Virus record (IMG/VR): IMGVR_UViG_3300046171_000231
Span: 124,001 to 188,000 of that record
Direction: 5' to 3' (one strand)
Length of the DNA stretch: 64,000 nucleotides
Below, piece by piece: positions 45,422 to 61,908 of the stretch; positions within the stretch are counted from its first letter, which is position 1, and every line of letters starts with the position of its first letter. The notes below the pieces were generated by a model, which was given only the letters and a program-made list of their open reading frames with translations, was not told the origin of the DNA and did not search any database. Position numbers and translations under genes: made by a program.

Positions 45422-47134
45422 TTAAGAAACAACACGAGAGAAACCTTTGACTTTCTCAAACCTTATCACACTATTAAATTTATCATGTAAGTCTACTTTA
45501 TGAGATATTACAAATACATTCGCATCTTTAATTACAAACCTGATTATCTTTAAGAATTCTTCAGTTCCCATACCATCAAGAGAACTATCAAATACCTCAT
45601 CCATAATCAATAGATTAGTATTTACTGAGTTCTTAACTCTTGCAACTTCTCTCCAAGTGAATAGTAATGCTAAGTCAATACGCATCTTCTCACCTTCACT
45701 AAAAGAGCTATAAGAAAAGTTCTCGTGAATTGGAGATTCTATCGTCTCACAAAATTCCTCATCTAACTTAAAGTTGATATAGAAATCCATCATCTGCAGA
45801 TAACGATTGACCTGTTGATTAATAAGTGGTAGATATTTTTTAATTATTTTTGTCTTAACTCCGTCATCTTTCAATAGCGAATATGCAAAATCATGATAAA
45901 TGATTTCTTCTTTCTTATCTGCTATTTCTTTAAAAATGTTTTGGAGATTTTGATTAAACTCTTTTAATTTTTCATCCTCAGTATTTCTGTTTGCAAGTTG
46001 AGTGGTAAGTTTTTGAATTTCTGATTCCAAATCTCTGACCTGTCGTTGACATCCAGAAATTCGAGTATTGTTTTGAGAAATGCCATTATTGAGTTTAGTA
46101 ATCTCCTTTGAAAGTTTGGTGAAAAGATGCTCTCTTTCTTCTTCGTTTTTAATTGCTTTTTCTAGTTCTTGATAACCAGATTGCAACTCTTTTGCTTTAG
46201 TTTGAGCATCACTAATTCTATTTAAACGAAACGATTCTTCTATCTCTTGAGTGCATGTAGGACATGTTACATTATCAGTAAAGAACTTATGTTCCTTCGT
46301 AATGGTTGCTACTTTCTGACTTAATTGACCCTTATATTTGTTAAGAGTCCGTAACTTTTTATTAGTTCCTGTGACCTTTTCTTGCTCTTCAGTTAACTCT
46401 ACAACTTGATTTTCTAATCCTTGATTATTAGATGAATACTCATCTTGTTCTTCGAGGAGGGTTGTAATTTTATCTTTTTTTCCTTGAATATTTGCCTTTC
46501 CACGATTCTCCAACTCTTCAATAAACTTCTTTTGCATATCTAACTTATCTTTTATATTCTCTCTAGCTAAGTCTAAAACTCTTATCTCATCCTTCTGTTT
46601 TCTTATCTTATCACGAATAATTACATTCATCGCAGAGAAAATACGAATATCTAATAAGTCTTCAATCACTTCTCTTCGATTTGTTCCTGACAATTGCATA
46701 AAAGGAACAAAAGCACTACTACCCAGAATTACTATCTGAGTAAAGGACTTATAGTTTACTTTAAGTATATTTTCCTCTAAAATCTTTTGAGTTGCACGGT
46801 CATCTGCCTGTTTGTGCATCTTTTGACCATCAACTTCTATTTCAAATAAATTTGGTTTGATTGATCTTCTTACAAGATATTGTCTTCCACTAATATCAAA
46901 CTCAACTTCAACACAACAATCTTTCTCATTCGTTGCATTTATGAGTTGAGACTTATTAATTTTACGAAAAGGTTTATTAAACAAACTAAAAGTCAAGGCA
47001 TCCAACACAGTGGATTTACCTGTACCGTTTGTTCCTACTATCAAATTCGTTGCATTTTTTTGGAAATCTATTTCCGAAAACTGGTCTCCAGTTGACAGAA
47101 AATTCTTCCATCTAATCTTTTGAAACGTTATCAT
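45422..47134 (-). CDS. gp46: Recombination endonuclease SMC-like subunit (T4 gp46)
   Basis: GTNGTGKS, CPTC zinc hook, FSEGEK and LLIMDE motifs. Confidence 0.95.
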   Translation of the reverse strand: MITFQKIRWKNFLSTGDQFSEIDFQKNATNLIVGTNGTGKSTVLDALTFSLFNKPFRKINKSQLINATNEKDCCVEVEFDISGRQYLVRRSIKPNLFEIEVDGQKMHKQADDRATQKILEENILKVNYKSFTQIVILGSSAFVPFMQLSGTNRREVIEDLLDIRIFSAMNVIIRDKIRKQKDEIRVLDLARENIKDKLDMQKKFIEELENRGKANIQGKKDKITTLLEEQDEYSSNNQGLENQVVELTEEQEKVTGTNKKLRTLNKYKGQLSQKVATITKEHKFFTDNVTCPTCTQEIEESFRLNRISDAQTKAKELQSGYQELEKAIKNEEEREHLFTKLSKEITKLNNGISQNNTRISGCQRQVRDLESEIQKLTTQLANRNTEDEKLKEFNQNLQNIFKEIADKKEEIIYHDFAYSLLKDDGVKTKIIKKYLPLINQQVNRYLQMMDFYINFKLDEEFCETIESPIHENFSYSSFSEGEKMRIDLALLFTWREVARVKNSVNTNLLIMDEVFDSSLDGMGTEEFLKIIRFVIKDANVFVISHKVDLHDKFNSVIRFEKVKGFSRVVS

Positions 47135-47390
47135 TCTTAGGTGGTGGAACGACTATATCGTTCGGTGTGATCACAGCGTACTTATAATTATACAGCTTAC
47201 AAGTCTTTATGGCAACTGTATCTTCAATTTCTATAACATTTAAGTCAGTGTCTTCATCATCATTCAACATCATAGCATATCTTTCCGCATCATCCTCTTC
47301 CTCAAACATAAAGAGAACTTTTTCCCCATACCGATTTAAAACAGCATAGGCACCATCGTCCCGTCTGTCTTTAAGTGAAAGAAGATACAT
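47112..47390 (-). CDS. Hypothetical protein
   Basis: MYLLSLK...GAYAV...KVLFMFEEEDDAERYA. Confidence 0.65.
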   Translation of the reverse strand: MYLLSLKDRRDDGAYAVLNRYGEKVLFMFEEEDDAERYAMMLNDDEDTDLNVIEIEDTVAIKTCKLYNYKYAVITPNDIVVPPPKNDNVSKD

Positions 47391-48430
47391 TAGTCTACCT
47401 CGCAAGCTTCTGTGTATATTTTTTGTAGAATTCCTTTAATGAGAGTTTTATCTCCTTCAAACTCAGATTCATCAATATAGCGATTCAATATACCAATCGT
47501 ATTCTCAGTTTCTTCAACTTCAAAGTCTGCACTTTCTGTTAAAACAAAATTTTCAATTATCTTTAAGTCTTGAATACCAGAGTTGTATAATTTATCTATA
47601 AACTTTTCAAATTGCTTTTGGTCGGTTTTCTTCTTTACAACTACTTTAATAATCTTATCTTTAAAATCTCTAGTATCAAATAACTTATAATTCGTATCTT
47701 CATAGTAAATATTATAAAATAGTCTATAAGGGTTGTTTACGGGTTTGTGTTCAATTGTTTTGGTATCAAAGATGTGAAACCCTCTTGTGTCCATAACATC
47801 ATTCCAGTACATTTCATAAGGGTTTCCGAGATAATATATCTTTCCATTATTAGAACGAGTATGATAATGACCTGAGTAAACACGATAAAATTTATCAAAT
47901 ACCTTTGTGTCCATTCCGTGTTCCATTGTATGACCACGAGTTGCTACAAAACCATTTAATTCAAGATGACCCATTATTACATCAGCAGATGTAGTATCCA
48001 TCATCTCAAGAGTTTGTAATTTATTCTCTTCATTAATCCAAGGAAGAAACAATATATCTAATCCACCAAGATTTACAGTAGTTGGTTCTGAATAAACTTT
48101 TACATTCTCATATTCCTTTAATAAAAGTTCGACTGTATTAATTTCATTTGTATCTTTATAGTATGCAGTATGATTACCAACGATTGTATGGACTGTTATA
48201 CCCATTGCTTGCAATCGGTCATAGTAGTTCTTTTTTGACCACTCAAGCGTTGCTAGGTCAATATTACGACGATTATCAAAAGTATCACCCATATCCACAA
48301 CAGTATCAATCTTATTTTTCTCCAAGTATGGAAAAAAGGTATTATCGTAAAACTTTTTGAAATATTTGTGTATATAATCAGCACCTTTTCTTGCACCGAA
48401 GTGCTGGTCTGTAATGATTGCTAACTTTTC
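47390..48430 (-). CDS. gp47: Recombination endonuclease nuclease subunit (T4 gp47, Mre11-like); start codon appears corrupted
   Basis: ITDQHFG, MGDTFDNR, VGNHT and SGHYH phosphoesterase motifs. Confidence 0.93.
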   Translation of the reverse strand, partial: EKLAIITDQHFGARKGADYIHKYFKKFYDNTFFPYLEKNKIDTVVDMGDTFDNRRNIDLATLEWSKKNYYDRLQAMGITVHTIVGNHTAYYKDTNEINTVELLLKEYENVKVYSEPTTVNLGGLDILFLPWINEENKLQTLEMMDTTSADVIMGHLELNGFVATRGHTMEHGMDTKVFDKFYRVYSGHYHTRSNNGKIYYLGNPYEMYWNDVMDTRGFHIFDTKTIEHKPVNNPYRLFYNIYYEDTNYKLFDTRDFKDKIIKVVVKKKTDQKQFEKFIDKLYNSGIQDLKIIENFVLTESADFEVEETENTIGILNRYIDESEFEGDKTLIKGILQKIYTEACEVD

Positions 48431-48905
48431 TATTTGAGGACTTGTACTGAATATTATCTTTAATTGTATTATAATCAGAACTACTACCTGCCATTGCACT
48501 ATCATCAACTGTCATCACTTCTTCAAATCCTGTCTTCTCAATTATCTTTGTTTTAATTTCTAATTGCTTCTTTTCCTTCTGTATTCTTCTTAGAAATGCA
48601 TAGTGTATGATTTGAGTAAAGTAAGCAAATGGATTTCTTGACTTCTCTGGGTCAAAGTTATGAATATACTGAACACAATTCTCTATTCCATCAGATATCA
48701 TATCATCACGAAACATATAGTTTACAAAGTTTGGTTTATATGATAAGTGTGTGGCAATCTTTAAAAAACAAGAACCTAAGTAATTTGTAATGCGTGGTTT
48801 AGGTAAATCATTTTCCTTTGCTTCTTTTACCTGTGCACGATATACAATTAATGCTTCTAACAGTTCACGATTATTTACATAATGCTCTGATTTTTTCTTT
48901 GCCAT
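48378..48905 (-). CDS. gp55: Late-transcription sigma factor (T4 gp55); native stop appears lost near 48428
   Basis: HYVNNREL...IATHLSYKPNFVNY...DMISDGIENC...NPFAYFTQI. Confidence 0.93.
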   Translation of the reverse strand: MAKKKSEHYVNNRELLEALIVYRAQVKEAKENDLPKPRITNYLGSCFLKIATHLSYKPNFVNYMFRDDMISDGIENCVQYIHNFDPEKSRNPFAYFTQIIHYAFLRRIQKEKKQLEIKTKIIEKTGFEEVMTVDDSAMAGSSSDYNTIKDNIQYKSSNRKVSNHYRPALRCKKRC

Positions 48906-48927
48906 ATACCTGACTTAATATATTGAT

Positions 48928-48956
48928 AGTATAACATATTTTATAAGACTTGACAA
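48928..48956 (-). promoter_or_regulatory. Sigma70-type promoter for gp55
   Basis: TTGTCA-17 nt-TATACT with TG extension. Confidence 0.7.
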
Positions 48957-49657
48957 GTTACTACTGATTCAAGATAAAATTTGCTACATTATTATATTCA
49001 TCAGTTGTTAACTCAGTTTTATTAGTATTACGTATATTAAAAGACATTATAATTCTTTCACCATCTGTGGGTGGAACTTCATGTTGTGTTTGAGGTGAAA
49101 ACAAAACTAAAGAGTCATTCTTCGGATAAACTGGTTTTTGACCATCAAATATTATTGGAGATGCATTATCTTCAACATAAGCATAATAACATCCTGATAT
49201 AAGAAATCCATCTAATAAGTTACCATGATCATGCTTCACTGTAAAGTTACCTTTCCGATAATGTGCTACCCAGAACTCTCCTACCTCTAAAACTTCTTTT
49301 GTAGAAAATAACTTATTATATAAATTTTGAGAATATTGTAATATCAAATTTAAATAGTTTGAAAATATATCAGTTAGTAAATGAGTTTCGTATACACTAG
49401 CCCAAGCTTTTACATTTGACTCCATTCCAACTGGATTTTCTCTCTCATAATCTATTATTAAATCTTTAATATGATTACTTCTATCTTTACCAAATAAATT
49501 GGTAGTCATTGATGTAGGAAGAAGATTTGATTTATTATACAACTTAGCTAACTTTGCAAGTTTATCATTAGTCAGATAACCTTCATCATACAAATGTGTA
49601 TACTGTTGTACTATTTGGTCAATGTTTATCTGCTTTTTCTCACTCACTTGACAAGTT
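48948..49657. repeat. 12-bp direct repeat ACTTGACAAGTT (48948-48959 and 49646-49657) flanking one gene
   Basis: Identical 12-mers at both ends of ORF 48961..49647. Confidence 0.8.
48961..49647 (-). CDS. 2OG-Fe(II) oxygenase-like protein (TIGR02466-like)
   Basis: FWVAHY..G..TVKHDH...SGCYY...FSPQTQHEV...RIIMSFN. Confidence 0.75.
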   Translation of the reverse strand: MSEKKQINIDQIVQQYTHLYDEGYLTNDKLAKLAKLYNKSNLLPTSMTTNLFGKDRSNHIKDLIIDYERENPVGMESNVKAWASVYETHLLTDIFSNYLNLILQYSQNLYNKLFSTKEVLEVGEFWVAHYRKGNFTVKHDHGNLLDGFLISGCYYAYVEDNASPIIFDGQKPVYPKNDSLVLFSPQTQHEVPPTDGERIIMSFNIRNTNKTELTTDEYNNVANFILNQ

Positions 49658-49676
49658 CCATAAATTTATGTACAAT
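49648..49676 (+). promoter_or_regulatory. Sigma70-type promoter pointing antisense into 49692..50108
   Basis: TTGACA-17 nt-TACAAT on the plus strand. Confidence 0.55.
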
Positions 49677-49691
49677 AACCTTTGTAGAGGT

Positions 49692-50108
49692 TCAAGGGTT
49701 GTTAGGCTTATCTATATTATTCTTAAAGATATTCTCAAGGCTCTCACGAGCATCTTCAACTGTAGTCAATAATCCCATCTTATTATTTAAGGATACTTGA
49801 CCATCAATTTCAATATCAATATCATCTTCATTTAAATATCTGGTATAAAATTTAATCATCTGTTCATCAGTTACTTCAGACATCGTAATAATTTTATCAT
49901 ACTTTATTAAAAATAAATCTTGATCTGGTAACTCTAACCAAGGTTTGACTTTAACATATTTTCCTGCAGGACTAGAAAGCATTTTCATTATTACTGGATT
50001 TGAAAGCATGATAATAGAGTCTCCATCATTCTCATCGACAGAAACAAGTGAGAAGATTTCCTCCCCTGTAATAAGTTTTAGAACTGCGTGAAATTCGTCT
50101 CCCATCAT
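49692..50108 (-). CDS. Conserved phage hypothetical protein (Sm-like fold)
   Basis: AVLKLITGEEIFS...NPV...VKPWL pattern. Confidence 0.7.
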   Translation of the reverse strand: MMGDEFHAVLKLITGEEIFSLVSVDENDGDSIIMLSNPVIMKMLSSPAGKYVKVKPWLELPDQDLFLIKYDKIITMSEVTDEQMIKFYTRYLNEDDIDIEIDGQVSLNNKMGLLTTVEDARESLENIFKNNIDKPNNP

Positions 50109-50743
50109 ACTCCTATATTATAATTGACAATGCATCTAGTATTACTATTTATAGGTTGTTTTGCTGCGTGATATAACCGACCATCAAATATAACCATTCG
50201 TCCTTGTTTTGGTGTTACACTTTCTTTTATAGTATATTTTTCATTAGGAAGTTCCTCTCTTTCATTGTATATGACAGTATCACCATCACTATCACAAACA
50301 TAATAAAGAGCCACCATAAAATTAATATCCTCTTCTATATCAATATGTGCTGTATCTATTGTTCCGTCCGTGTTTATTGGAAATTGTAAAAAAGAACGTC
50401 CTTGAAGAACTTGTACATTAGAAAGTCCTAGTTTTAAACCAACTCTTTGTAGCATAGGTACAAATAATTCATGATAGTCACTATGTACCCTACCTAGTAA
50501 GTTAGGTTTATGAGGTTCATAATTATCTTCTGTCCATTCTTTAGGTAGGTTAACATATTGATGAGAAAGACCAGGTCTATGTTTACTATCATCATCAAAA
50601 GCTACTGTAACATCTTCAATATAATGCCAAGGAAACTGTAGTCCAGTATGATCTATTCCACCAAGTAATTCTGTTTTTATTTTATTTTGATAATCTTTTT
50701 CAATAAAGTCATCAATGACCATAATTTGATTTTTAAATTTCAT
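50105..50743 (-). CDS. 2OG-Fe(II) oxygenase superfamily protein
   Basis: AHID (HxD)...YYVCDSDGDT...PKQGRMVIFDGRLYHA...RCIVNYN. Confidence 0.85.
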   Translation of the reverse strand: MKFKNQIMVIDDFIEKDYQNKIKTELLGGIDHTGLQFPWHYIEDVTVAFDDDSKHRPGLSHQYVNLPKEWTEDNYEPHKPNLLGRVHSDYHELFVPMLQRVGLKLGLSNVQVLQGRSFLQFPINTDGTIDTAHIDIEEDINFMVALYYVCDSDGDTVIYNEREELPNEKYTIKESVTPKQGRMVIFDGRLYHAAKQPINSNTRCIVNYNIGV

Positions 50744-52209
50744 TAATTTTTCAAAGGTATTTTTACAATGTCATAGTTAAAATTCTCTTCATTATACACT
50801 TTTATTCTCTCAATGAGATGGTTCAGTGTATAATTTCTTCTTGATTTGTAACTAATATCATCGGCAATATCATATAGAGTTGCCTTTGTTTTATTGTTTC
50901 CCTTTCTTAAGACTCTTCCGATTGATTGAAGGTTTCGTATTCGAGATTTAGATGGGGAAGCAAAGATGACATTATGAAGGTTCTTAATGTTGATTCCTGT
51001 TGAGAAGGTTCCGTATGAGGCAATAATGATTGCGTTATTCTCCATCTCTGTAATTGAGCGAACCTCTTCTCGATCTTCTGTTGCAACTCCTCCGTGTACG
51101 AAGAAGACTTGTCGTTGTTCAAGTACATTGCTCTCCTGTATTAAATTATATAGCGGTTCTCCGTGTCCTTCGACCCTTGCAAATAGAATTAATGTATTAC
51201 CTTTAAGATCAAGGGCAAGATTTTTAATAAAATTATTTCTCTTTTGATGTCCAATAATATATTGAATCTCATCCTCAAATGTCTCAAATTTATTTGGTGA
51301 GTGTTTCAATAGAAGCACATTAATATCCAACGTCGCTACATGACCTTTCTTCATAAGCTCGTCTGTCTTAATAATTTTATAAGAAGGACCAAATAAACCT
51401 TCTAATACCCACTTATGGGTCTGTGTTCCATCAAGAGTTCCTGTGAAACCAAAACGATACTTGGCATTATCAAGTTTTGACATTATAGATATTAATGACT
51501 TTGATTTAAACTGATGTGCCTCATCTCCGATTACACATCCAAAACGATTAAAGTACTTACGAGGAAGTTTGTAGATCGATTGCCAAGTTGTAATGATTAC
51601 TTGAGAATCTGTTTCTCTTTCTTTACCTGCATATATCTTGTGACAAAATGAGCCAACTTCCCAACCATAATCCTCGAAATCTTTATACATCTGTTCTACT
51701 AAAGATGTCGTCGGAACTACTATCAGAATACTTAGTTTTCTTTCAACGTAATATCTCACAATCCCGTATATCATCAGCGACTTTCCTGAAGCAGTTGGAG
51801 ATATCAATAACCTACGATTGTATTTTAAAGCGTCGTGTACTCCCTGAATCTGATAATCTCTAGGTTTATATTTACTTACAGCGTTTAAATAATCTTTGAC
51901 ACCCTCTTCACATATACCATCATTTACCTCAAAAGGTAAACCATAGAACTTGCTTGGTTGAAAATCATATGTATATCCGTGGTCTTTACAGAACTGTACG
52001 ATCTTATCTAACAGTCCGACATATATTTGATTGTTCTGAATATTAAATAACCTTATCTTTCCGTCCCAATACTTATTCTTATAAGTTGGCATAAACTTTG
52101 CACCTGGTACTTCAAAGGTGAAATAGTCTGCTAACTCATAATAAACATGCATTTCAGACTCAATCTGAAGATGCACTTCATTCTTTTTTGATATTATCAA
52201 ATGCGACAT
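50743..52209 (-). CDS. uvsW: SF2 RNA-DNA/DNA-DNA helicase UvsW
   Basis: PRDYQ, SPTASGKS, GDEAH, FTGT and QSIGRVLR motifs. Confidence 0.95.
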   Translation of the reverse strand: MSHLIISKKNEVHLQIESEMHVYYELADYFTFEVPGAKFMPTYKNKYWDGKIRLFNIQNNQIYVGLLDKIVQFCKDHGYTYDFQPSKFYGLPFEVNDGICEEGVKDYLNAVSKYKPRDYQIQGVHDALKYNRRLLISPTASGKSLMIYGIVRYYVERKLSILIVVPTTSLVEQMYKDFEDYGWEVGSFCHKIYAGKERETDSQVIITTWQSIYKLPRKYFNRFGCVIGDEAHQFKSKSLISIMSKLDNAKYRFGFTGTLDGTQTHKWVLEGLFGPSYKIIKTDELMKKGHVATLDINVLLLKHSPNKFETFEDEIQYIIGHQKRNNFIKNLALDLKGNTLILFARVEGHGEPLYNLIQESNVLEQRQVFFVHGGVATEDREEVRSITEMENNAIIIASYGTFSTGINIKNLHNVIFASPSKSRIRNLQSIGRVLRKGNNKTKATLYDIADDISYKSRRNYTLNHLIERIKVYNEENFNYDIVKIPLKN

Positions 52210-52250
52210 AACATCGATCAATATCAATTATTTAGTCGTGTTTTATAAAC

Positions 52251-53267: not shown

Positions 53268-53695
53268 TTATATCCTGATTGAAACTTATTCCATTCAATT
53301 GCATTTTTAATTTGATATGTTCGATTAGATACTGCTCTTATAACTTCTTCTAAAAATTTAAGCATAATATCATAGTATTTAATTTTCATATCAACTTTAT
53401 TCATTCTATCGTCTGCTTCAAGATGTCTTTGGATAGCATCTTTTTCACGAACCTTATATGGAAATGGTTCTTCGATATATGCTTCTGCTGGTGCCTTACC
53501 TGTGTAATAATTATATCTTTCTAATCTAACTTTACTATATTGTGTTCTTGCCTTCTCTCTCATTAAAGTAATTGTATTATAAAGTGTATAATACTTTGAG
53601 TGAAGTTGAGGTATTTTTAAAGATTCATCATGTAAATTATCAGGATCGATATGAGAATCTTTTTCCCACATCTCCTGTATTTGTTCAAGATTCAT
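53264..53695 (-). CDS. uvsY: Recombination mediator UvsY
   Basis: WEKDSHID...ESLKIPQLHSKY...RTYQIKNAIEW. Confidence 0.88.
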   Translation of the reverse strand: MNLEQIQEMWEKDSHIDPDNLHDESLKIPQLHSKYYTLYNTITLMREKARTQYSKVRLERYNYYTGKAPAEAYIEEPFPYKVREKDAIQRHLEADDRMNKVDMKIKYYDIMLKFLEEVIRAVSNRTYQIKNAIEWNKFQSGYN

Positions 53696-54231
53696 GTAGT
53701 GCTACTTACTAAATCGTATATTGTATATTTGAATGTTGCCTCTGCTGTAAAAAATTGTACGTCAGTATTTGTTGCATCAAATTCTAAAGAAGTTAAAGAT
53801 ATTGGAAATAAATCATTAAATTTAACTTTTGCAACTTCTCTATAATTACTATTCAGTATTCTTAGAGTGCCATCACAAAATGCTTCTTTGGGATCTCTTT
53901 GTCCATCAGGGTCTGTAATTATTTCTTTAAATTGTTTTCCAGACTCTGGAAATCCTAATCCTTTTAACCAACCATATACAGAAAGATAATTTTCCATATT
54001 TTCATCAACTAAAAAACGAAGAGTAAAATCTCCAAAAGTTAGTCTTTCACCAGGCACATCAATATTTTTTAAGTATGATGCTTGAGTAGTAAGTTCGAGG
54101 CTTAACTCTGGTATTCTAGCAGAATTTGAGAAAAAGTCAACCTTCGGAAACTTAGTCAAATTAAATTTAAATCCTACTCCCGAAAGAAAATTTCTATTAT
54201 CTATTTGCTTTACAAATGCCGAATTAGTCAT
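53692..54231 (-). CDS. gp3: Tail completion/sheath stabilizer (T4 gp3)
   Basis: NRNFLS..GFKF...PGERLTFGDFTLRFLVDENMENY...F..LFPISL. Confidence 0.85.
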   Translation of the reverse strand: MTNSAFVKQIDNRNFLSGVGFKFNLTKFPKVDFFSNSARIPELSLELTTQASYLKNIDVPGERLTFGDFTLRFLVDENMENYLSVYGWLKGLGFPESGKQFKEIITDPDGQRDPKEAFCDGTLRILNSNYREVAKVKFNDLFPISLTSLEFDATNTDVQFFTAEATFKYTIYDLVSSTT

Positions 54232-59601: not shown

Positions 59602-59628
59602 AAGATTAAATTATAGCAATATGTTTAT

Positions 59629-61293
59629 TTATATCTCTGCTGATTTGGTATCTTTTTGATACTCAGCATCAGTAATTTGTGCTTCTGCTTCTACATCTGG
59701 ATCTTGTGGTACATCACCTAAATCTTCACCACCTTCTTGAGGTAATGGTTCTCCAGTTATTGGGTCAACCTCTGCAGGATTTGGAATGATACCTTTTTGT
59801 ATTTCATCTTCAATCTGCATATCAATCTCTTCAATTTCCTGATCTGTTTGACGTAATACTCTCTTTCTTACAAATTCAGTTGAATAATACTTACCAATAT
59901 AAGGTTCAATTTGTGCAAGATTACCTAAACGACCTTGTATCATTTCAGTTTCTTTGAGCTCTGCAAACTGATTATCATATAAGAAGTCATATTGAATATG
60001 ATCTTCCATCTTATTCCAGTCTTCTGGAGTTACAATATTCTTTAATATTAACTGAGTTTTGAGCATATCATTGAACATATGTGCAAAACGCTTTCTTAAA
60101 CGACCTACAAACTTTGCAAATTTAAGTTCGTCTCTTAATATTTCTGATGAACGACCTAAGTTAAACCCACCTTCTGCAGCAATTCTTGACTCAGGAATAC
60201 CTAATGCACGATATAATTTCTTCTGAAAATATTCAATATCGGAAAGTTCACCAAGATTTTGTCCACCTGGTAGAGTTGTGATTTCAGTTCCACGACCACC
60301 TTCTCTTCTTGGCAACCAAAAATCTTCCATCATACTCATAAATTTACGATCATCACGAACTTCACCAGTTTGTGCGTTGTAAGTTAACTTATTACGATAG
60401 CGACTCATTACCTCTTTAAGATATTGTTCTGCCTTAACTTTTGGTAAATTTCCAACATCAATATAAAATATTCTTCTTTCTGGTGCTCTTGATAAACGAT
60501 AGATAACAAGACTATCTTCAATCATTCTTAATTGATTGAGTGCTTTGATTGCTTTATGAAGATATGAAAGAACACGATTCTTATTTCGATCTACTAAACC
60601 AGATGTACACATAGTAATTGAATCTTTTGCAATTTTAGTCGATCCTTTACCTGCTTGTGCAATCATCCCTGTTGGATAATTAGGTTTCATTGAATAGATG
60701 TAGTATTCATCAAATTCAGGACTCATAATACTATCGTCCTTACTATTAATTCTTATGTAAGGATCATCTTTACCATTCTTCCTTTTTTCTTGTTTAACAA
60801 ACTTCAACTTCATCGGGTCAATATATCTTAAATCCTTGAGTCCTTCCTGTGGATTTTTTGTATCGATTACCTTTAGATAATATAAACGACCATCTATATA
60901 CCAATTTCTAAAAATTTCGTGAGACTTCTTATCAAAGTCCATCAATTCTTTAATATATCTGAACTCTTCTCTAATTTTTTTCTTTATGCCATCACTCGCA
61001 TTAAGATTTGATAGTTCAACTTCAACAGGAGAATCATATAGATCACTTACAATTGCTTCATTAACAACATCTTCAATGGCACCATCTGCTTCTGGATGCA
61101 GAGCCATCTCTCTATATCTTTTAATTAATTCGTGTTCAGAACGATATGCACCTTCAATATCTACGTATTGACCATAAAATCCACTTGCTATATAATTATC
61201 AACCCCGTCCTCATTATTTTTGGGGACAGGGGAGACAATAGAAGTTGATTTATCTTCTGTTTCTTCAATAGAAAAACCGAAAAGTTTTGCCAT
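59629..61293 (-). CDS. gp20: Portal vertex protein (T4 gp20)
   Basis: WYIDGRL, LRMIEDSLVIYRLSRAPERRIFYIDVG and EDFWLPRREGG. Confidence 0.97.
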   Translation of the reverse strand: MAKLFGFSIEETEDKSTSIVSPVPKNNEDGVDNYIASGFYGQYVDIEGAYRSEHELIKRYREMALHPEADGAIEDVVNEAIVSDLYDSPVEVELSNLNASDGIKKKIREEFRYIKELMDFDKKSHEIFRNWYIDGRLYYLKVIDTKNPQEGLKDLRYIDPMKLKFVKQEKRKNGKDDPYIRINSKDDSIMSPEFDEYYIYSMKPNYPTGMIAQAGKGSTKIAKDSITMCTSGLVDRNKNRVLSYLHKAIKALNQLRMIEDSLVIYRLSRAPERRIFYIDVGNLPKVKAEQYLKEVMSRYRNKLTYNAQTGEVRDDRKFMSMMEDFWLPRREGGRGTEITTLPGGQNLGELSDIEYFQKKLYRALGIPESRIAAEGGFNLGRSSEILRDELKFAKFVGRLRKRFAHMFNDMLKTQLILKNIVTPEDWNKMEDHIQYDFLYDNQFAELKETEMIQGRLGNLAQIEPYIGKYYSTEFVRKRVLRQTDQEIEEIDMQIEDEIQKGIIPNPAEVDPITGEPLPQEGGEDLGDVPQDPDVEAEAQITDAEYQKDTKSAEI

Positions 61294-61320
61294 AGTATAA
61301 TATTTTTGTTATATGTTTAT

Positions 61321-61908
61321 TTAGCTGATGTCTACACCGCCTGATACGGGACTGTCTCCCTTAAGAATTTCAATATACTGAACCTGAAGTTCAACAGTAA
61401 ATTCTTGAATACCTTGAGCGTCATATGATAATTCGATAGGACCGACCTGTGTTGGGAAGGTATCATAGAAACGATATTTCCTGATACTTTGTCCATCACG
61501 ATCAAGTTGGAATACAAATGCGTCAGACTGATATGCAGCAGGATTAACTAATCCAGTGTTATCACTTAACTTGTTGATTGTATTCATCCAGTTCTCAAAT
61601 GCAGATCTTATTGCAAAGTCTGTATCGTTGATTACTGTGACTGTCCATGAATCGAACGTTCTGTCACCTGCGATTTTAAGAACCCTTCCTCGGAAAGGAA
61701 CTTCTATTTGTGCAATGTTTGATGCGGGTAATCTTGCTCCTTTAACCAAGAACCTTGATTTGTCAAGAACATCCTGTGCTGGTTGAGCAGCATCTGGGAA
61801 TGTGAGGACTACTTCAAACAGATTAGCACGAGCACCGCCACCTGTCAACTTACTTTTAAAGTCTGAAATCGTTCTTAATGGTGGTGGATTGACCTGATTT
61901 CTAGCCAT
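61321..61908 (-). CDS. gp19: Tail tube protein (T4 gp19)
   Basis: GGARANLFEV, VPFRGRVLKIAGDRTFDSWT and FPTQVGPIEL. Confidence 0.93.
   Translation of the reverse strand: MARNQVNPPPLRTISDFKSKLTGGGARANLFEVVLTFPDAAQPAQDVLDKSRFLVKGARLPASNIAQIEVPFRGRVLKIAGDRTFDSWTVTVINDTDFAIRSAFENWMNTINKLSDNTGLVNPAAYQSDAFVFQLDRDGQSIRKYRFYDTFPTQVGPIELSYDAQGIQEFTVELQVQYIEILKGDSPVSGGVDIS

What the first reader, a model, noticed from the sequence alone, without database searches (positions are those of the whole stretch)
48948..49657. Oxygenase gene exactly bracketed by a 12-bp repeat that is a bidirectional -35 core
ACTTGACAAGTT occurs 1 nt beyond the gene's stop and again overlapping its GTG start. The near-palindrome reads TTGACA on plus and TTGTCA on minus. 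The left copy is the -35 of the gp55 promoter; the right copy is the -35 of an outward plus-strand promoter. This looks like one ancestral divergent promoter split by integration of a circular single-gene cassette via the promoter core, a possible mechanism for auxiliary-gene shuffling without a dedicated integrase.
Basis: partly seen in the sequence, partly recalled or inferred. Interest (0 to 1): 0.66.

Follow-up and report, generated by a model that had tools for sequence, protein, structure and literature searches.

The report
Oxygenase gene splitting a two-way promoter
In an uncultured ocean cyanophage, an accessory oxygenase gene sits exactly inside what is in most relatives a single two-way promoter, with the 12-base promoter core now present on both sides; this is a real and well-replicated gene insertion, but the proposed circular-cassette mechanism is not shown.

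Summary
ACTTGACAAGTT occurs only twice in the 235.8-kb T4-like cyanomyovirus genome, at 48948-48959 and 49646-49657. The two copies bracket a minus-strand 2OG-Fe(II) oxygenase gene (48961-49647): the GTG start overlaps the right copy and the stop lies 1 nt from the left copy.

About 76 related contigs and phage P-SSM2 have the Sm-like gene next to gp55, with one core between them. The core serves TTGTCA-N16-18-TATAAT towards gp55 and TTGACA-N17-TACAAT on the other strand. At least 28 contigs carry the gene with two cores, each keeping one promoter half. Both alleles co-occur in three seawater metagenomes. So "one divergent promoter split by an insertion" is supported.

The circular-cassette mechanism is not supported:
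- A 92%-identical copy of the gene core sits at a second site, bracketed by a different, local repeat.
- Some cargo-less relatives already have two separated cores.
- No circle junction or predicted excision product was found.
- The genome shows no excess of genes bracketed by boundary repeats.

Best reading: an integrase-free illegitimate insertion that duplicated local punctuation, with both copies kept by selection. It resembles PeSL shuffling in T4-type coliphages but is not a member. Interest is moderate.

The parts
48948..48959 (.). Left copy of the 12-mer ACTTGACAAGTT. On the minus strand it supplies the -35 (TTGTCA) of the gp55 promoter.
   Evidence: The core CTTGTCAAG is almost invariant upstream of gp55 in 72 distinct relatives.
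49646..49657 (.). Right copy of the 12-mer. On the plus strand it supplies the -35 (TTGACA) of an outward promoter-like site. On the minus strand its last two bases start the GTG start codon of the oxygenase gene.
   Evidence: TTGTCAAGTG is invariant in all filled alleles.
48961..49647 (-). oxyA: a 228-aa putative 2OG-Fe(II) oxygenase, the inserted accessory gene. It has no promoter of its own.
   Evidence: PHROG 81, E 1.3e-20. Pfam PF13759 scores 26.7 bits, just under the 27-bit cut-off. The GTG start is supported by a conserved N-terminus with synonymous changes. dN/dS is about 0.09 against L087.
48928..48956 (-). gp55 promoter: -35 TTGTCA (48956-48951), 17-nt spacer, -10 TATACT (48933-48928) preceded by TG.
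   Evidence: TATAAT or TATACT lies 16-18 nt from the core in 64 of 72 distinct relatives. Expression was not tested.
49648..49676 (+). Plus-strand sigma70-like promoter: TTGACA, 17 nt, TACAAT. It points antisense into the Sm-like and uvsW genes.
   Evidence: It is the best hit of the region at 11 of 12. The -10 TA(C/G)A(A/C)T sits at a fixed 17 nt, with a variable spacer, in at least 66 of 72 empty alleles and in all filled alleles. Expression was not tested.
48378..48905 (-). gp55, the late-transcription sigma factor. It is 175 aa here and 159 aa in relatives.
49692..50108 (-). Sm-like gene (PHROG 471, annotated 'methylamine utilization'). In relatives it is the immediate upstream neighbour of gp55.
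49677..49692 (.). Short hairpin-capable stretch (AACCT..AGGTT) between the Sm-like stop and the plus-strand -10. It is weak.
   Evidence: -5 kcal/mol, z -0.13 on the minus-strand RNA; -9 kcal/mol, z -1.24 on the plus-strand RNA. RNAalifold found no consensus structure.
50105..50743 (-). oxyB: a second inserted oxygenase-like gene that is present or absent among relatives. It is bracketed by TAATG stop-start overlaps.
   Evidence: (a contig in run X2 lacks it).

Best explanation
oxyA is an accessory, moron-like gene inserted into the shared, palindromic -35 core of a conserved back-to-back promoter pair, which drives gp55 on the minus strand and an antisense transcript on the plus strand. The insertion came with a duplication of the local 12-bp core. 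The likely cause is an integrase-free illegitimate event by the phage's own replication and recombination machinery. This could be a template switch that re-copied the core, or a small tandem duplication of the core followed by insertion between the copies.

Both copies have since been kept by selection. The gp55-proximal copy remains the -35 of the gp55 promoter. The distal copy keeps TTGACA 17 nt from TACAAT on the other strand and also supplies the GTG start of oxyA. oxyA has no promoter of its own and is presumably read through from the Sm-like gene.

The filled and empty alleles are both old (dS about 0.5) and co-exist in ocean populations. The cassette has also moved between diverged backbones, apparently by ordinary recombination through the short conserved promoter boxes and flanking genes.

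What is shown: the anatomy, the empty and filled alleles, the conservation of both promoter halves, the co-occurrence of alleles, and the discordant divergence. What is inferred: promoter activity, the read-through expression of oxyA, and the molecular mechanism of the original insertion.
For: - **Empty sites.** There is one core between the Sm-like gene and gp55 in about 76 of 80 IMG/VR loci and in P-SSM2 and P-SSM5.
- **Filled alleles.** At least 28 contigs carry the gene and always have two cores. The right copy is invariant as TTGTCAAGTG, 17 nt from ATTGTA. The left copy is CTTGTCAA, 16-17 nt from TATAAT or TATACT. The stop codon moves around the left copy: before it, inside it or after it.
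- **Promoter conservation.** Both hexamer pairs are conserved with a variable spacer in 72 distinct sequences. They are the top consensus hits in the window.
- **Selection.** Among window-clade filled alleles, dS is about 0.5 in oxyA and in both flanking genes, yet both cores are intact.
- **Movement between backbones.** For the window against L094, oxyA dS is 0.54 while gp55 dS is 1.5 and Sm dN is 0.37. L126 is a mosaic. At least 4-5 state changes are needed on the gp55 tree.
- **Local origin of the repeat.** A copy 92% identical over the 564-nt core lies in a late structural region. There it is bracketed by two copies of that site's own intergenic motif (CATAAATAACTAAAAA..GTA). Empty alleles L109 and L115 have one copy.
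- **Same pattern for oxyB.** It is bracketed by the local TAATG stop-start overlap.
- **Core duplication without cargo.** Cargo-less alleles with a split or tandem core show that the core duplicates by itself.
- **No dedicated machinery.** There is no integrase or resolvase in the genome and no terminal inverted repeats at the insert ends.
- **Alleles co-occur.** Both alleles are present in runs X1-X3, from three studies.
Against: - No transcript data exist. Neither promoter, and in particular not the plus-strand one, has been shown to fire. The right copy could be kept only for the GTG start.
- The original insertion event cannot be reconstructed. A template switch and a duplication followed by insertion are both inferred from analogy.
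- A shared ATGG just upstream of the right copy, in alleles on different backbones, means the right copy travels with the cassette in later transfers. This is also compatible with a cassette-borne core.
- The late-site copy could result from gene conversion between old paralogues rather than from a new insertion.
- The duplicated stretches differ in length (5, 12 and about 19-21 nt), so a single mechanism is not demonstrated.
Confidence: 0.55

Rival explanations
1. The first reader's model, equivalent to the PeSL mini-circle model. A circular single-gene cassette carrying one copy of the 12-mer integrated by homologous recombination with the resident promoter core (Campbell type). It can excise again through the two copies.
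For: The exact 12-bp direct repeat brackets the gene, and single-core empty sites exist. Mini-circles formed between flanking promoter cassettes are documented in RB49 and phi1 (PMC2839356). The genome has no integrase. The phage encodes its own recombination genes next door (gp46, gp47, UvsW). Presence and absence flip several times on the gp55 tree.
Against: - No back-joint was seen in contigs of four runs.
- The circle or tandem junction pattern has 0 hits in metagenome and viral contigs. Power is low, since only 11 contigs hold the control junction.
- The predicted excision product has 0 hits.
- Empty alleles in the same samples carry their own spacer (10 other letters at the joint). They are not fresh excisions.
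- A nearly identical gene core at a second site is flanked by a different, local repeat, with breakpoints inside the ORF.
- Cargo-less alleles with two cores exist.
- Only two copies of the core occur in the genome, and there is no excess of boundary repeats.
Confidence: 0.15
2. The filled, two-core state is ancestral, and single-core alleles arose repeatedly by deletion between the direct repeats. On this view it is gene loss, not gain.
For: Deletion between short direct repeats is common. Filled and empty alleles interleave on the gp55 tree. Filled alleles are old and diverse, with oxyA down to 57% identity.
Against: The single-core state dominates across all sampled gp55 clades, including P-SSM2. 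Empty alleles do not carry the ATGG flank that lies upstream of the right copy, as a 12-mer-mediated deletion would leave, and that product was not found. Filled alleles occur in only two parts of the tree.
Confidence: 0.15
3. An enzyme-mediated insertion with a true target-site duplication, by a transposase or a homing-type endonuclease acting in trans.
For: A duplication of local target sequence is seen at two different sites for the same cargo family. One relative has a tandem core that could be an excision footprint (L085).
Against: The insert has no terminal inverted repeats. No transposase or recombinase was found, and none of the neighbouring genes is an endonuclease. The duplication lengths differ (5, 12 and about 19-21 nt), unlike a single transposase.
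Confidence: 0.08
4. The repeat is a chance coincidence of two unrelated 12-mers.
For: Roughly 70 such 12-mer pairs are expected by chance in this AT-rich genome. The boundary-repeat scan is not enriched.
Against: The two-core bracket is conserved in at least 28 contigs across a dS of 0.5 or more, with the core under clear constraint. The single-core empty alleles match both outer flanks.
Confidence: 0.02

Closest known systems
PeSL (promoter-early stem-loop) cassettes and mini-circles of T4-type coliphages RB49/phi1, T4/PST and KVP40/nt-1 (Arbiol et al. 2010, PMC2839356; Comeau et al. 2014, PMC4122927)
   Same: The host is a T4-like myovirus. A sigma70-like early promoter element flanks a non-essential gene on both sides. 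The indel between close relatives is bounded by that element. No integrase is involved, and the phage or host recombination machinery is presumed responsible.
   Different: - Only two copies of the core exist in the genome, not a dense array in hyperplastic regions.
- The repeat is 12 nt, the bare -35 core, not a composite cassette.
- No convincing stem-loop or terminator is present.
- The upstream copy is not the cargo's promoter; it overlaps the cargo's start codon.
- No circles were detected.
- The site lies in the conserved replication and recombination module (gp46-gp47-gp55-uvsW), not in a hyperplastic region.
- Puxty et al. 2015 (PMC4503421) judged PeSLs sparse in cyanophage S-PM2.
Morons of tailed phages: single accessory genes inserted between conserved genes (from my own knowledge; Hendrix and colleagues)
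   Same: A single accessory gene sits precisely between two conserved genes. It is absent from close relatives, and its evolutionary history differs from that of its flanks.
   Different: Classical morons carry their own promoter and terminator. oxyA has neither. Instead it duplicated the resident promoter core.
Integron gene cassettes (attC x attI, IntI)
   Same: Both concern promoter-less single-gene cassettes thought to move as circles into a site next to a promoter.
   Different: There is no IntI-type recombinase and no attC-like element. The flanking repeat is local target sequence and differs between the two sites that hold the gene.
Bidirectional bacterial promoters that arise from sequence symmetry (from my own knowledge; described for the symmetric -10 element)
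   Same: Two divergent promoters share one symmetric core element.
   Different: Here the shared symmetric element is the -35 (TTGACA / TGTCAA within CTTGTCAAG), with two separate -10 boxes about 17 nt to either side. Activity was not tested.
Spontaneous deletion and plasticity in cyanomyovirus genomes (S-PM2 ORFanage, PMC4503421; mobile cassettes in Sullivan et al. 2010, PMC3037559)
   Same: Accessory genes are present or absent among marine T4-like cyanophages. 2OG-Fe(II) oxygenases occur as multi-copy, sporadically placed genes.
   Different: Those papers do not describe insertion junctions at a duplicated promoter core. The passages I searched in Sullivan et al. 2010 invoke tRNAs and homing endonucleases for mobility.

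Membership tests
PeSL regulatory cassette (Arbiol 2010) | Contains a strong sigma70-like early promoter | tested here: met
   At sequence level only. The minus-strand site is TTGTCA-17-TATACT and the plus-strand site is TTGACA-17-TACAAT. Both are conserved in 72 distinct relatives. No expression data exist.
PeSL regulatory cassette (Arbiol 2010) | Contains a stable stem-loop that acts as a terminator | tested here: not met
   Only a 4-5 bp hairpin is possible. It folds at -5 kcal/mol, z -0.13. RNAalifold found no consensus structure over 71 sequences, and no terminator-like site was called there.
PeSL regulatory cassette (Arbiol 2010) | Many copies, clustered in hyperplastic regions and flanking ORFans | tested here: not met
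   The genome has two exact copies and two more with one mismatch. Boundary repeats of 320 ORFs match the random-pairing expectation. The site lies in the conserved gp46-gp47-gp55-uvsW module.
PeSL regulatory cassette (Arbiol 2010) | Indels between close relatives are bounded by the element | tested here: met
   There are single-core empty alleles and two-core filled alleles, and both occur in the same metagenomes.
PeSL regulatory cassette (Arbiol 2010) | Extrachromosomal mini-circles formed by recombination between the flanking elements | tested here: inconclusive
   No back-joint appeared in contigs of four runs. The junction pattern has 0 hits in two contig collections. Assembled contigs cannot show rare circles, and only 11 control contigs exist.
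Transposable element with target-site duplication | Terminal inverted repeats and a transposase or recombinase | tested here: not met
   The insert termini carry no inverted repeats. PF00589 and PF00239 are absent from the genome. DDE, HUH and homing endonuclease families were not searched.
Integron cassette | attC recombination site and IntI integrase | tested here: not met
   No tyrosine recombinase is present. The only symmetric element is the 11-nt promoter palindrome.
2OG-Fe(II) oxygenase superfamily (the cargo) | Significant match to a family profile | tested here: met
   PHROG 81 '2OG-Fe(II) oxygenase', E 1.3e-20. Pfam PF13759 gives E 7.8e-6 at 26.7 bits, just below the 27-bit cut-off. 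Homologues are pre-annotated as PF13759. Catalytic residues and fold were not examined.

The most novel reading that the evidence does not exclude
The palindromic -35 core shared by two divergent promoters may be a preferred, integrase-free attachment point for small circular gene cassettes in marine T4-like cyanophages. Cassettes would enter and leave through it using the phage's own recombination system, and each entry would split a two-way promoter into two one-way promoters. That would extend the PeSL mini-circle mechanism to ocean cyanophages and to auxiliary metabolic genes. A second, independent novelty also remains open: a conserved antisense transcript from the plus-strand promoter across the Sm-like and uvsW genes.
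Probability: 0.12. Interest if true: 0.7.

Novelty: new variant of a known kind. Interest (0 to 1): 0.45.

Why it matters
How accessory and auxiliary metabolic genes move in and out of the otherwise rigid T4-like cyanophage genomes is poorly understood. This locus is a clean natural example with many replicates. It has single-core empty alleles, two-core filled alleles, cargo-less split-core alleles, and the same cargo at a second site with a different local duplication.

It shows that insertions which survive are those that regenerate the regulatory punctuation of both neighbours. Here that means duplicating a shared -35, so that each copy keeps one promoter. It also points to a conserved back-to-back promoter pair upstream of the late sigma factor gp55, which may produce an unreported antisense RNA. 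This can be tested directly in the cultured phage P-SSM2.

It does not establish a new mobility mechanism.

Tried and rejected
- **Duplication longer than 12 nt.** By eye the flanks looked similar. Local alignment against shuffles gave p 0.27-0.94, so this was rejected. A shared TCAGT(G) before the left copy in filled and some empty alleles is too short, and is partly explained by the stop codon, so I gave it no weight.
- **NtcA site in the spacer.** The GTA-N8-TAC pattern is not conserved among relatives. I judged this by eye.
- **Known RNA family.** Rfam gave no match at E of 1 or below over 48000-51000.
- **Conserved hairpin or terminator.** RNAalifold found none and the folds do not differ from shuffles.
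- **Circle or tandem junction.** The search had 0 hits in metagenome contigs and viral contigs. Power is low.
- **Predicted 12-mer excision product.** 0 hits in viral contigs.
- **Looking at the gp55 site of the genome that holds the late-site copy (L091).** The record is not held.
- **The late site in the window's own genome.** There is no clear orthologue of the 81-aa neighbour, so no reciprocal empty-site test was possible.
- **Genome-wide excess of genes bracketed by boundary repeats.** None was found.
- **Cultured phage with the filled allele.** None exists. The best oxyA match is 40% identity, in P-SSM2 at another locus.

Full report
**1. What is in the sequence**

The window is bases 124001-188000 of a 235,761-bp virus record, with CheckV completeness 100. 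Around the finding, all genes lie on the minus strand:

| Gene | Coordinates |
|---|---|
| gp46 | 45422-47134 |
| DUF3110 gene | 47112-47405 |
| gp47 | 47390-48508 |
| gp55 late sigma factor | 48378-48905 |
| 228-aa ORF (oxyA) | 48961-49647 |
| Sm-like gene | 49692-50108 |
| second oxygenase-like ORF (oxyB) | 50105-50743 |
| UvsW | 50743-52227 |

The gp47-gp55 stretch is 77% identical in nucleotides to Prochlorococcus phages P-SSM2 and P-SSM5, so this is a T4-like cyanomyovirus.

The 228-aa ORF, here called oxyA, matches PHROG 81 '2OG-Fe(II) oxygenase' at E 1.3e-20. It scores just below the Pfam cut-off for PF13759.

ACTTGACAAGTT occurs exactly at 48948-48959 and 49646-49657, and nowhere else in the genome. 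The TAG stop of oxyA is 1 nt from the left copy, and its GTG start overlaps the right copy. The GTG start is real. The N-terminus SEKKQIN..DQIVQ is conserved in relatives with mostly synonymous differences.

**2. Is the repeat more than chance?**

On its own, no. Markov simulations of this 35% GC genome give about 70 exact 12-mer pairs at 100-1500 bp spacing. A scan of 320 ORFs for repeats shared by their two boundaries matches random pairing, and only oxyA and the portal gene reach 12 nt or more. No similarity extends beyond the 12 nt. The case rests on comparison with relatives.

**3. Empty and filled alleles**

I fetched 80 IMG/VR loci through gp55. In 76 of them the Sm-like gene lies directly upstream of gp55, with an 85-163 nt gap. 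In most there is one copy of the core CTTGTCAAG, 48-104 nt before the ATG. P-SSM2 and P-SSM5 are the same. The closest empty alleles (L007-L011, gp55 96-99% identical) match the window's outer flanks on both sides.

oxyA homologues are numerous in marine metagenomes (205 hits). Wherever context was recovered for the 57-98% identical forms at this site, the order is Sm-like gene, oxyA, gp55, with two cores: L087, L088, L094-L107 and L118-L128.

Contigs from three seawater metagenomes of three studies contain both forms:
- The filled allele spans 48893-49694.
- An empty allele shows as a joint from 48956 to 49665 with 10 other letters between. This is an L008-type spacer, not a fresh excision.

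**4. The promoter pair**

On the minus strand the left copy gives TTGTCA, then 17 nt, then TATACT with a preceding TG. On the plus strand the right copy gives TTGACA, then 17 nt, then TACAAT, the best consensus hit of the region at 11 of 12.

In 72 distinct empty-site sequences one core serves both promoters:
- CTTGTCAAG is nearly invariant.
- TATAAT or TATACT follows at 16-18 nt in 64 of 72.
- The complement of TA(C/G)A(A/C)T precedes the core at a fixed 17 nt in at least 66 of 72.
- The spacers vary freely.

In every filled allele the distal copy stays 17 nt from TACAAT and keeps ...TTGTCAAGTG. The proximal copy stays 16-17 nt from the gp55 -10. The stop codon of oxyA moves around: before the proximal copy, inside it or after it.

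Promoter activity itself is inferred. I found no transcript data and no Rfam family.

**5. Age and movement**

Among filled alleles of the window's clade, dS is about 0.5 in oxyA, the Sm-like gene and gp55 alike. The arrangement is therefore old, and two intact cores after that much divergence mean selection on both. oxyA has a dN/dS of about 0.1-0.4 and is under constraint.

Against L094, oxyA has dS 0.54, while gp55 has dS 1.5 and the Sm-like gene dN 0.37. L035 is L094's own empty counterpart, and L126 is a three-way mosaic. The cassette has therefore crossed between diverged backbones. On a gp55 tree the filled state needs at least 4-5 changes.

**6. Tests of the circular-cassette model**

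- **(a) The repeat is local, not cassette-borne.** Copies of the gene in a late structural region lie between an 81-aa gene and collagen/C1q-type genes (L089-L093). They are 92.0% identical to the window over the 564-nt core, closer than the same-site allele L087 at 89.2%, and they group with the window allele (support 88/91). Homology breaks inside the ORF, after about codon 17 and after ...MSFNI. There the gene is bracketed by two copies of that site's own intergenic motif, CATAAATAACTAAAAA(AA)GTA. Empty alleles L109 and L115 have one copy.
- **(b) oxyB shows the same pattern.** It is bracketed by the local TAATG stop-start overlap and is also polymorphic.
- **(c) Gene-less relatives can have two cores.** L073 has 10 nt between them. 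L078 and L068/L082 have a few tens of nt between them, and the L061 group has a degenerate second copy. L085 has a tandem core followed by a different 185-aa cargo that is not bracketed.
- **(d) No circle or excision product.** No circle or tandem junction and no predicted excision product was found. Power is low, because only 11 control contigs hold the junction and assembled contigs do not report rare forms.
- **(e) No enzyme or element ends.** There are no terminal inverted repeats and no tyrosine or serine recombinase.
- **(f) No genome-wide excess** of bracketed genes.

**7. Reading**

The insertion and the split promoter are well supported. The mechanism is open. The local nature of the duplications at three junction types (5, 12 and about 19-21 nt), together with the cargo-less split cores, favours one of two routes. 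The first is an illegitimate, replication- or recombination-based insertion that re-copies local punctuation. The second is a prior small duplication that created a safe gap between the two promoters. In both cases selection keeps only arrangements where both neighbours retain their signals.

Later spread between backbones needs only ordinary recombination through the conserved promoter boxes and flanking genes. A Campbell-type entry of a mini-circle through the 12-mer remains possible but has no positive evidence here.

**8. Relation to known systems**

This locus shares three features with it: a promoter element flanks the gene, the indel is bounded by that element, and no integrase is involved. 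It fails two defining features, the stem-loop terminator and the dense multi-copy distribution. Circles remain untested. Puxty et al. 2015 considered PeSLs unlikely in cyanophage S-PM2. Sullivan et al. 2010 discuss mobile cassettes in cyanophages, but in the passages I searched not this kind of junction. I therefore class it as a new variant of a known kind.

**9. Limits**

All relatives are metagenomic contigs, and no cultured phage carries the filled allele. Depth values from contigs were not used quantitatively.

Noticed in passing
window 49648-49700 (+), and the homologous place in L007-L086 and P-SSM2 (L001 6560-6600): A near-consensus plus-strand promoter (TTGACA-17-TACAAT) points antisense into the Sm-like and uvsW genes. 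It is conserved at fixed spacing in at least 66 of 72 distinct relatives, which suggests a conserved antisense RNA. No plus-strand gene follows it.
   Followed up: partly
window 50105-50743 (-): The second oxygenase-like gene (oxyB) is also present or absent among relatives, and a contig of run X2 lacks it. It is inserted exactly between uvsW and the Sm-like gene, with a TAATG stop-start overlap at both ends. Pfam calls it 2OG-FeII_Oxy_3, while PHROG 274 is labelled 'DNA endonuclease V'.
   Followed up: partly
L089-L093 (for example L091 2474-3132); empty alleles L109 and L115: A copy of the oxyA core, 92% identical in nucleotides, lies in a late structural region between an 81-aa gene and collagen/C1q-type genes. 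It is bracketed by two copies of the local intergenic motif CATAAATAACTAAAAA..GTA. Relatives without it have one copy.
   Followed up: yes
L073, L078, L068, L082, L061, L034, L064, L072, L041 (upstream of gp55): These gene-less relatives carry two or three separated copies of the promoter core, with about 10 to 40 nt between them. They look like small tandem duplications of the -35 and spacer region.
   Followed up: partly
L085 4300-5000: A tandem core CTTGTCAAGCTTGTCAAG is followed by a different 185-aa cargo (weak methyltransferase match) between the Sm-like gene and gp55. There gp55 has only an extended -10 (TGCTATAAT).
   Followed up: partly
window 48378-48440 (-): gp55 is 175 aa here and 159 aa in relatives, and its tail overlaps gp47. 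Contigs in runs X1, X2 and X4 have one extra base after 48428, and many loose ends occur at 48427-48439. This may be a frameshift variant, an assembly slip or another insertion hotspot. Relatives carry a 68-82 aa ORF between gp55 and gp47.
   Followed up: no
window 49641-49658 (-): Most filled alleles have a 5-codon upstream mini-ORF, ATG GAA CTT GTC AAG TGA, whose TGA overlaps the GTG start of oxyA (GTGA). This could give translational coupling. L088, L103, L125 and L126 lack it.
   Followed up: no
window 59619-59631 and 61311-61323: The portal gene (59629-61293, minus strand) is the only other ORF in the genome with a boundary repeat of 12 nt or more. The repeat is TAAATAAACATAT on the minus strand and resembles a late promoter.
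   Followed up: no
L094 1-4321: This contig has the order Sm-like, oxyA, gp55, NdhS-like, UvsY, 2OG oxygenase, UvsW. The backbone is rearranged, but the Sm-like, oxyA, gp55 trio is kept.
   Followed up: no
G000 53415-54045 (outside the window): Direct repeats of 16-24 nt (CTGATGTGATGCGAAGTCTTTCTG) lie 225-384 bp apart. In addition, the random pairing of gene boundaries turned up shared stretches of 24-32 nt, so the genome does hold some repeated intergenic elements.
   Followed up: no
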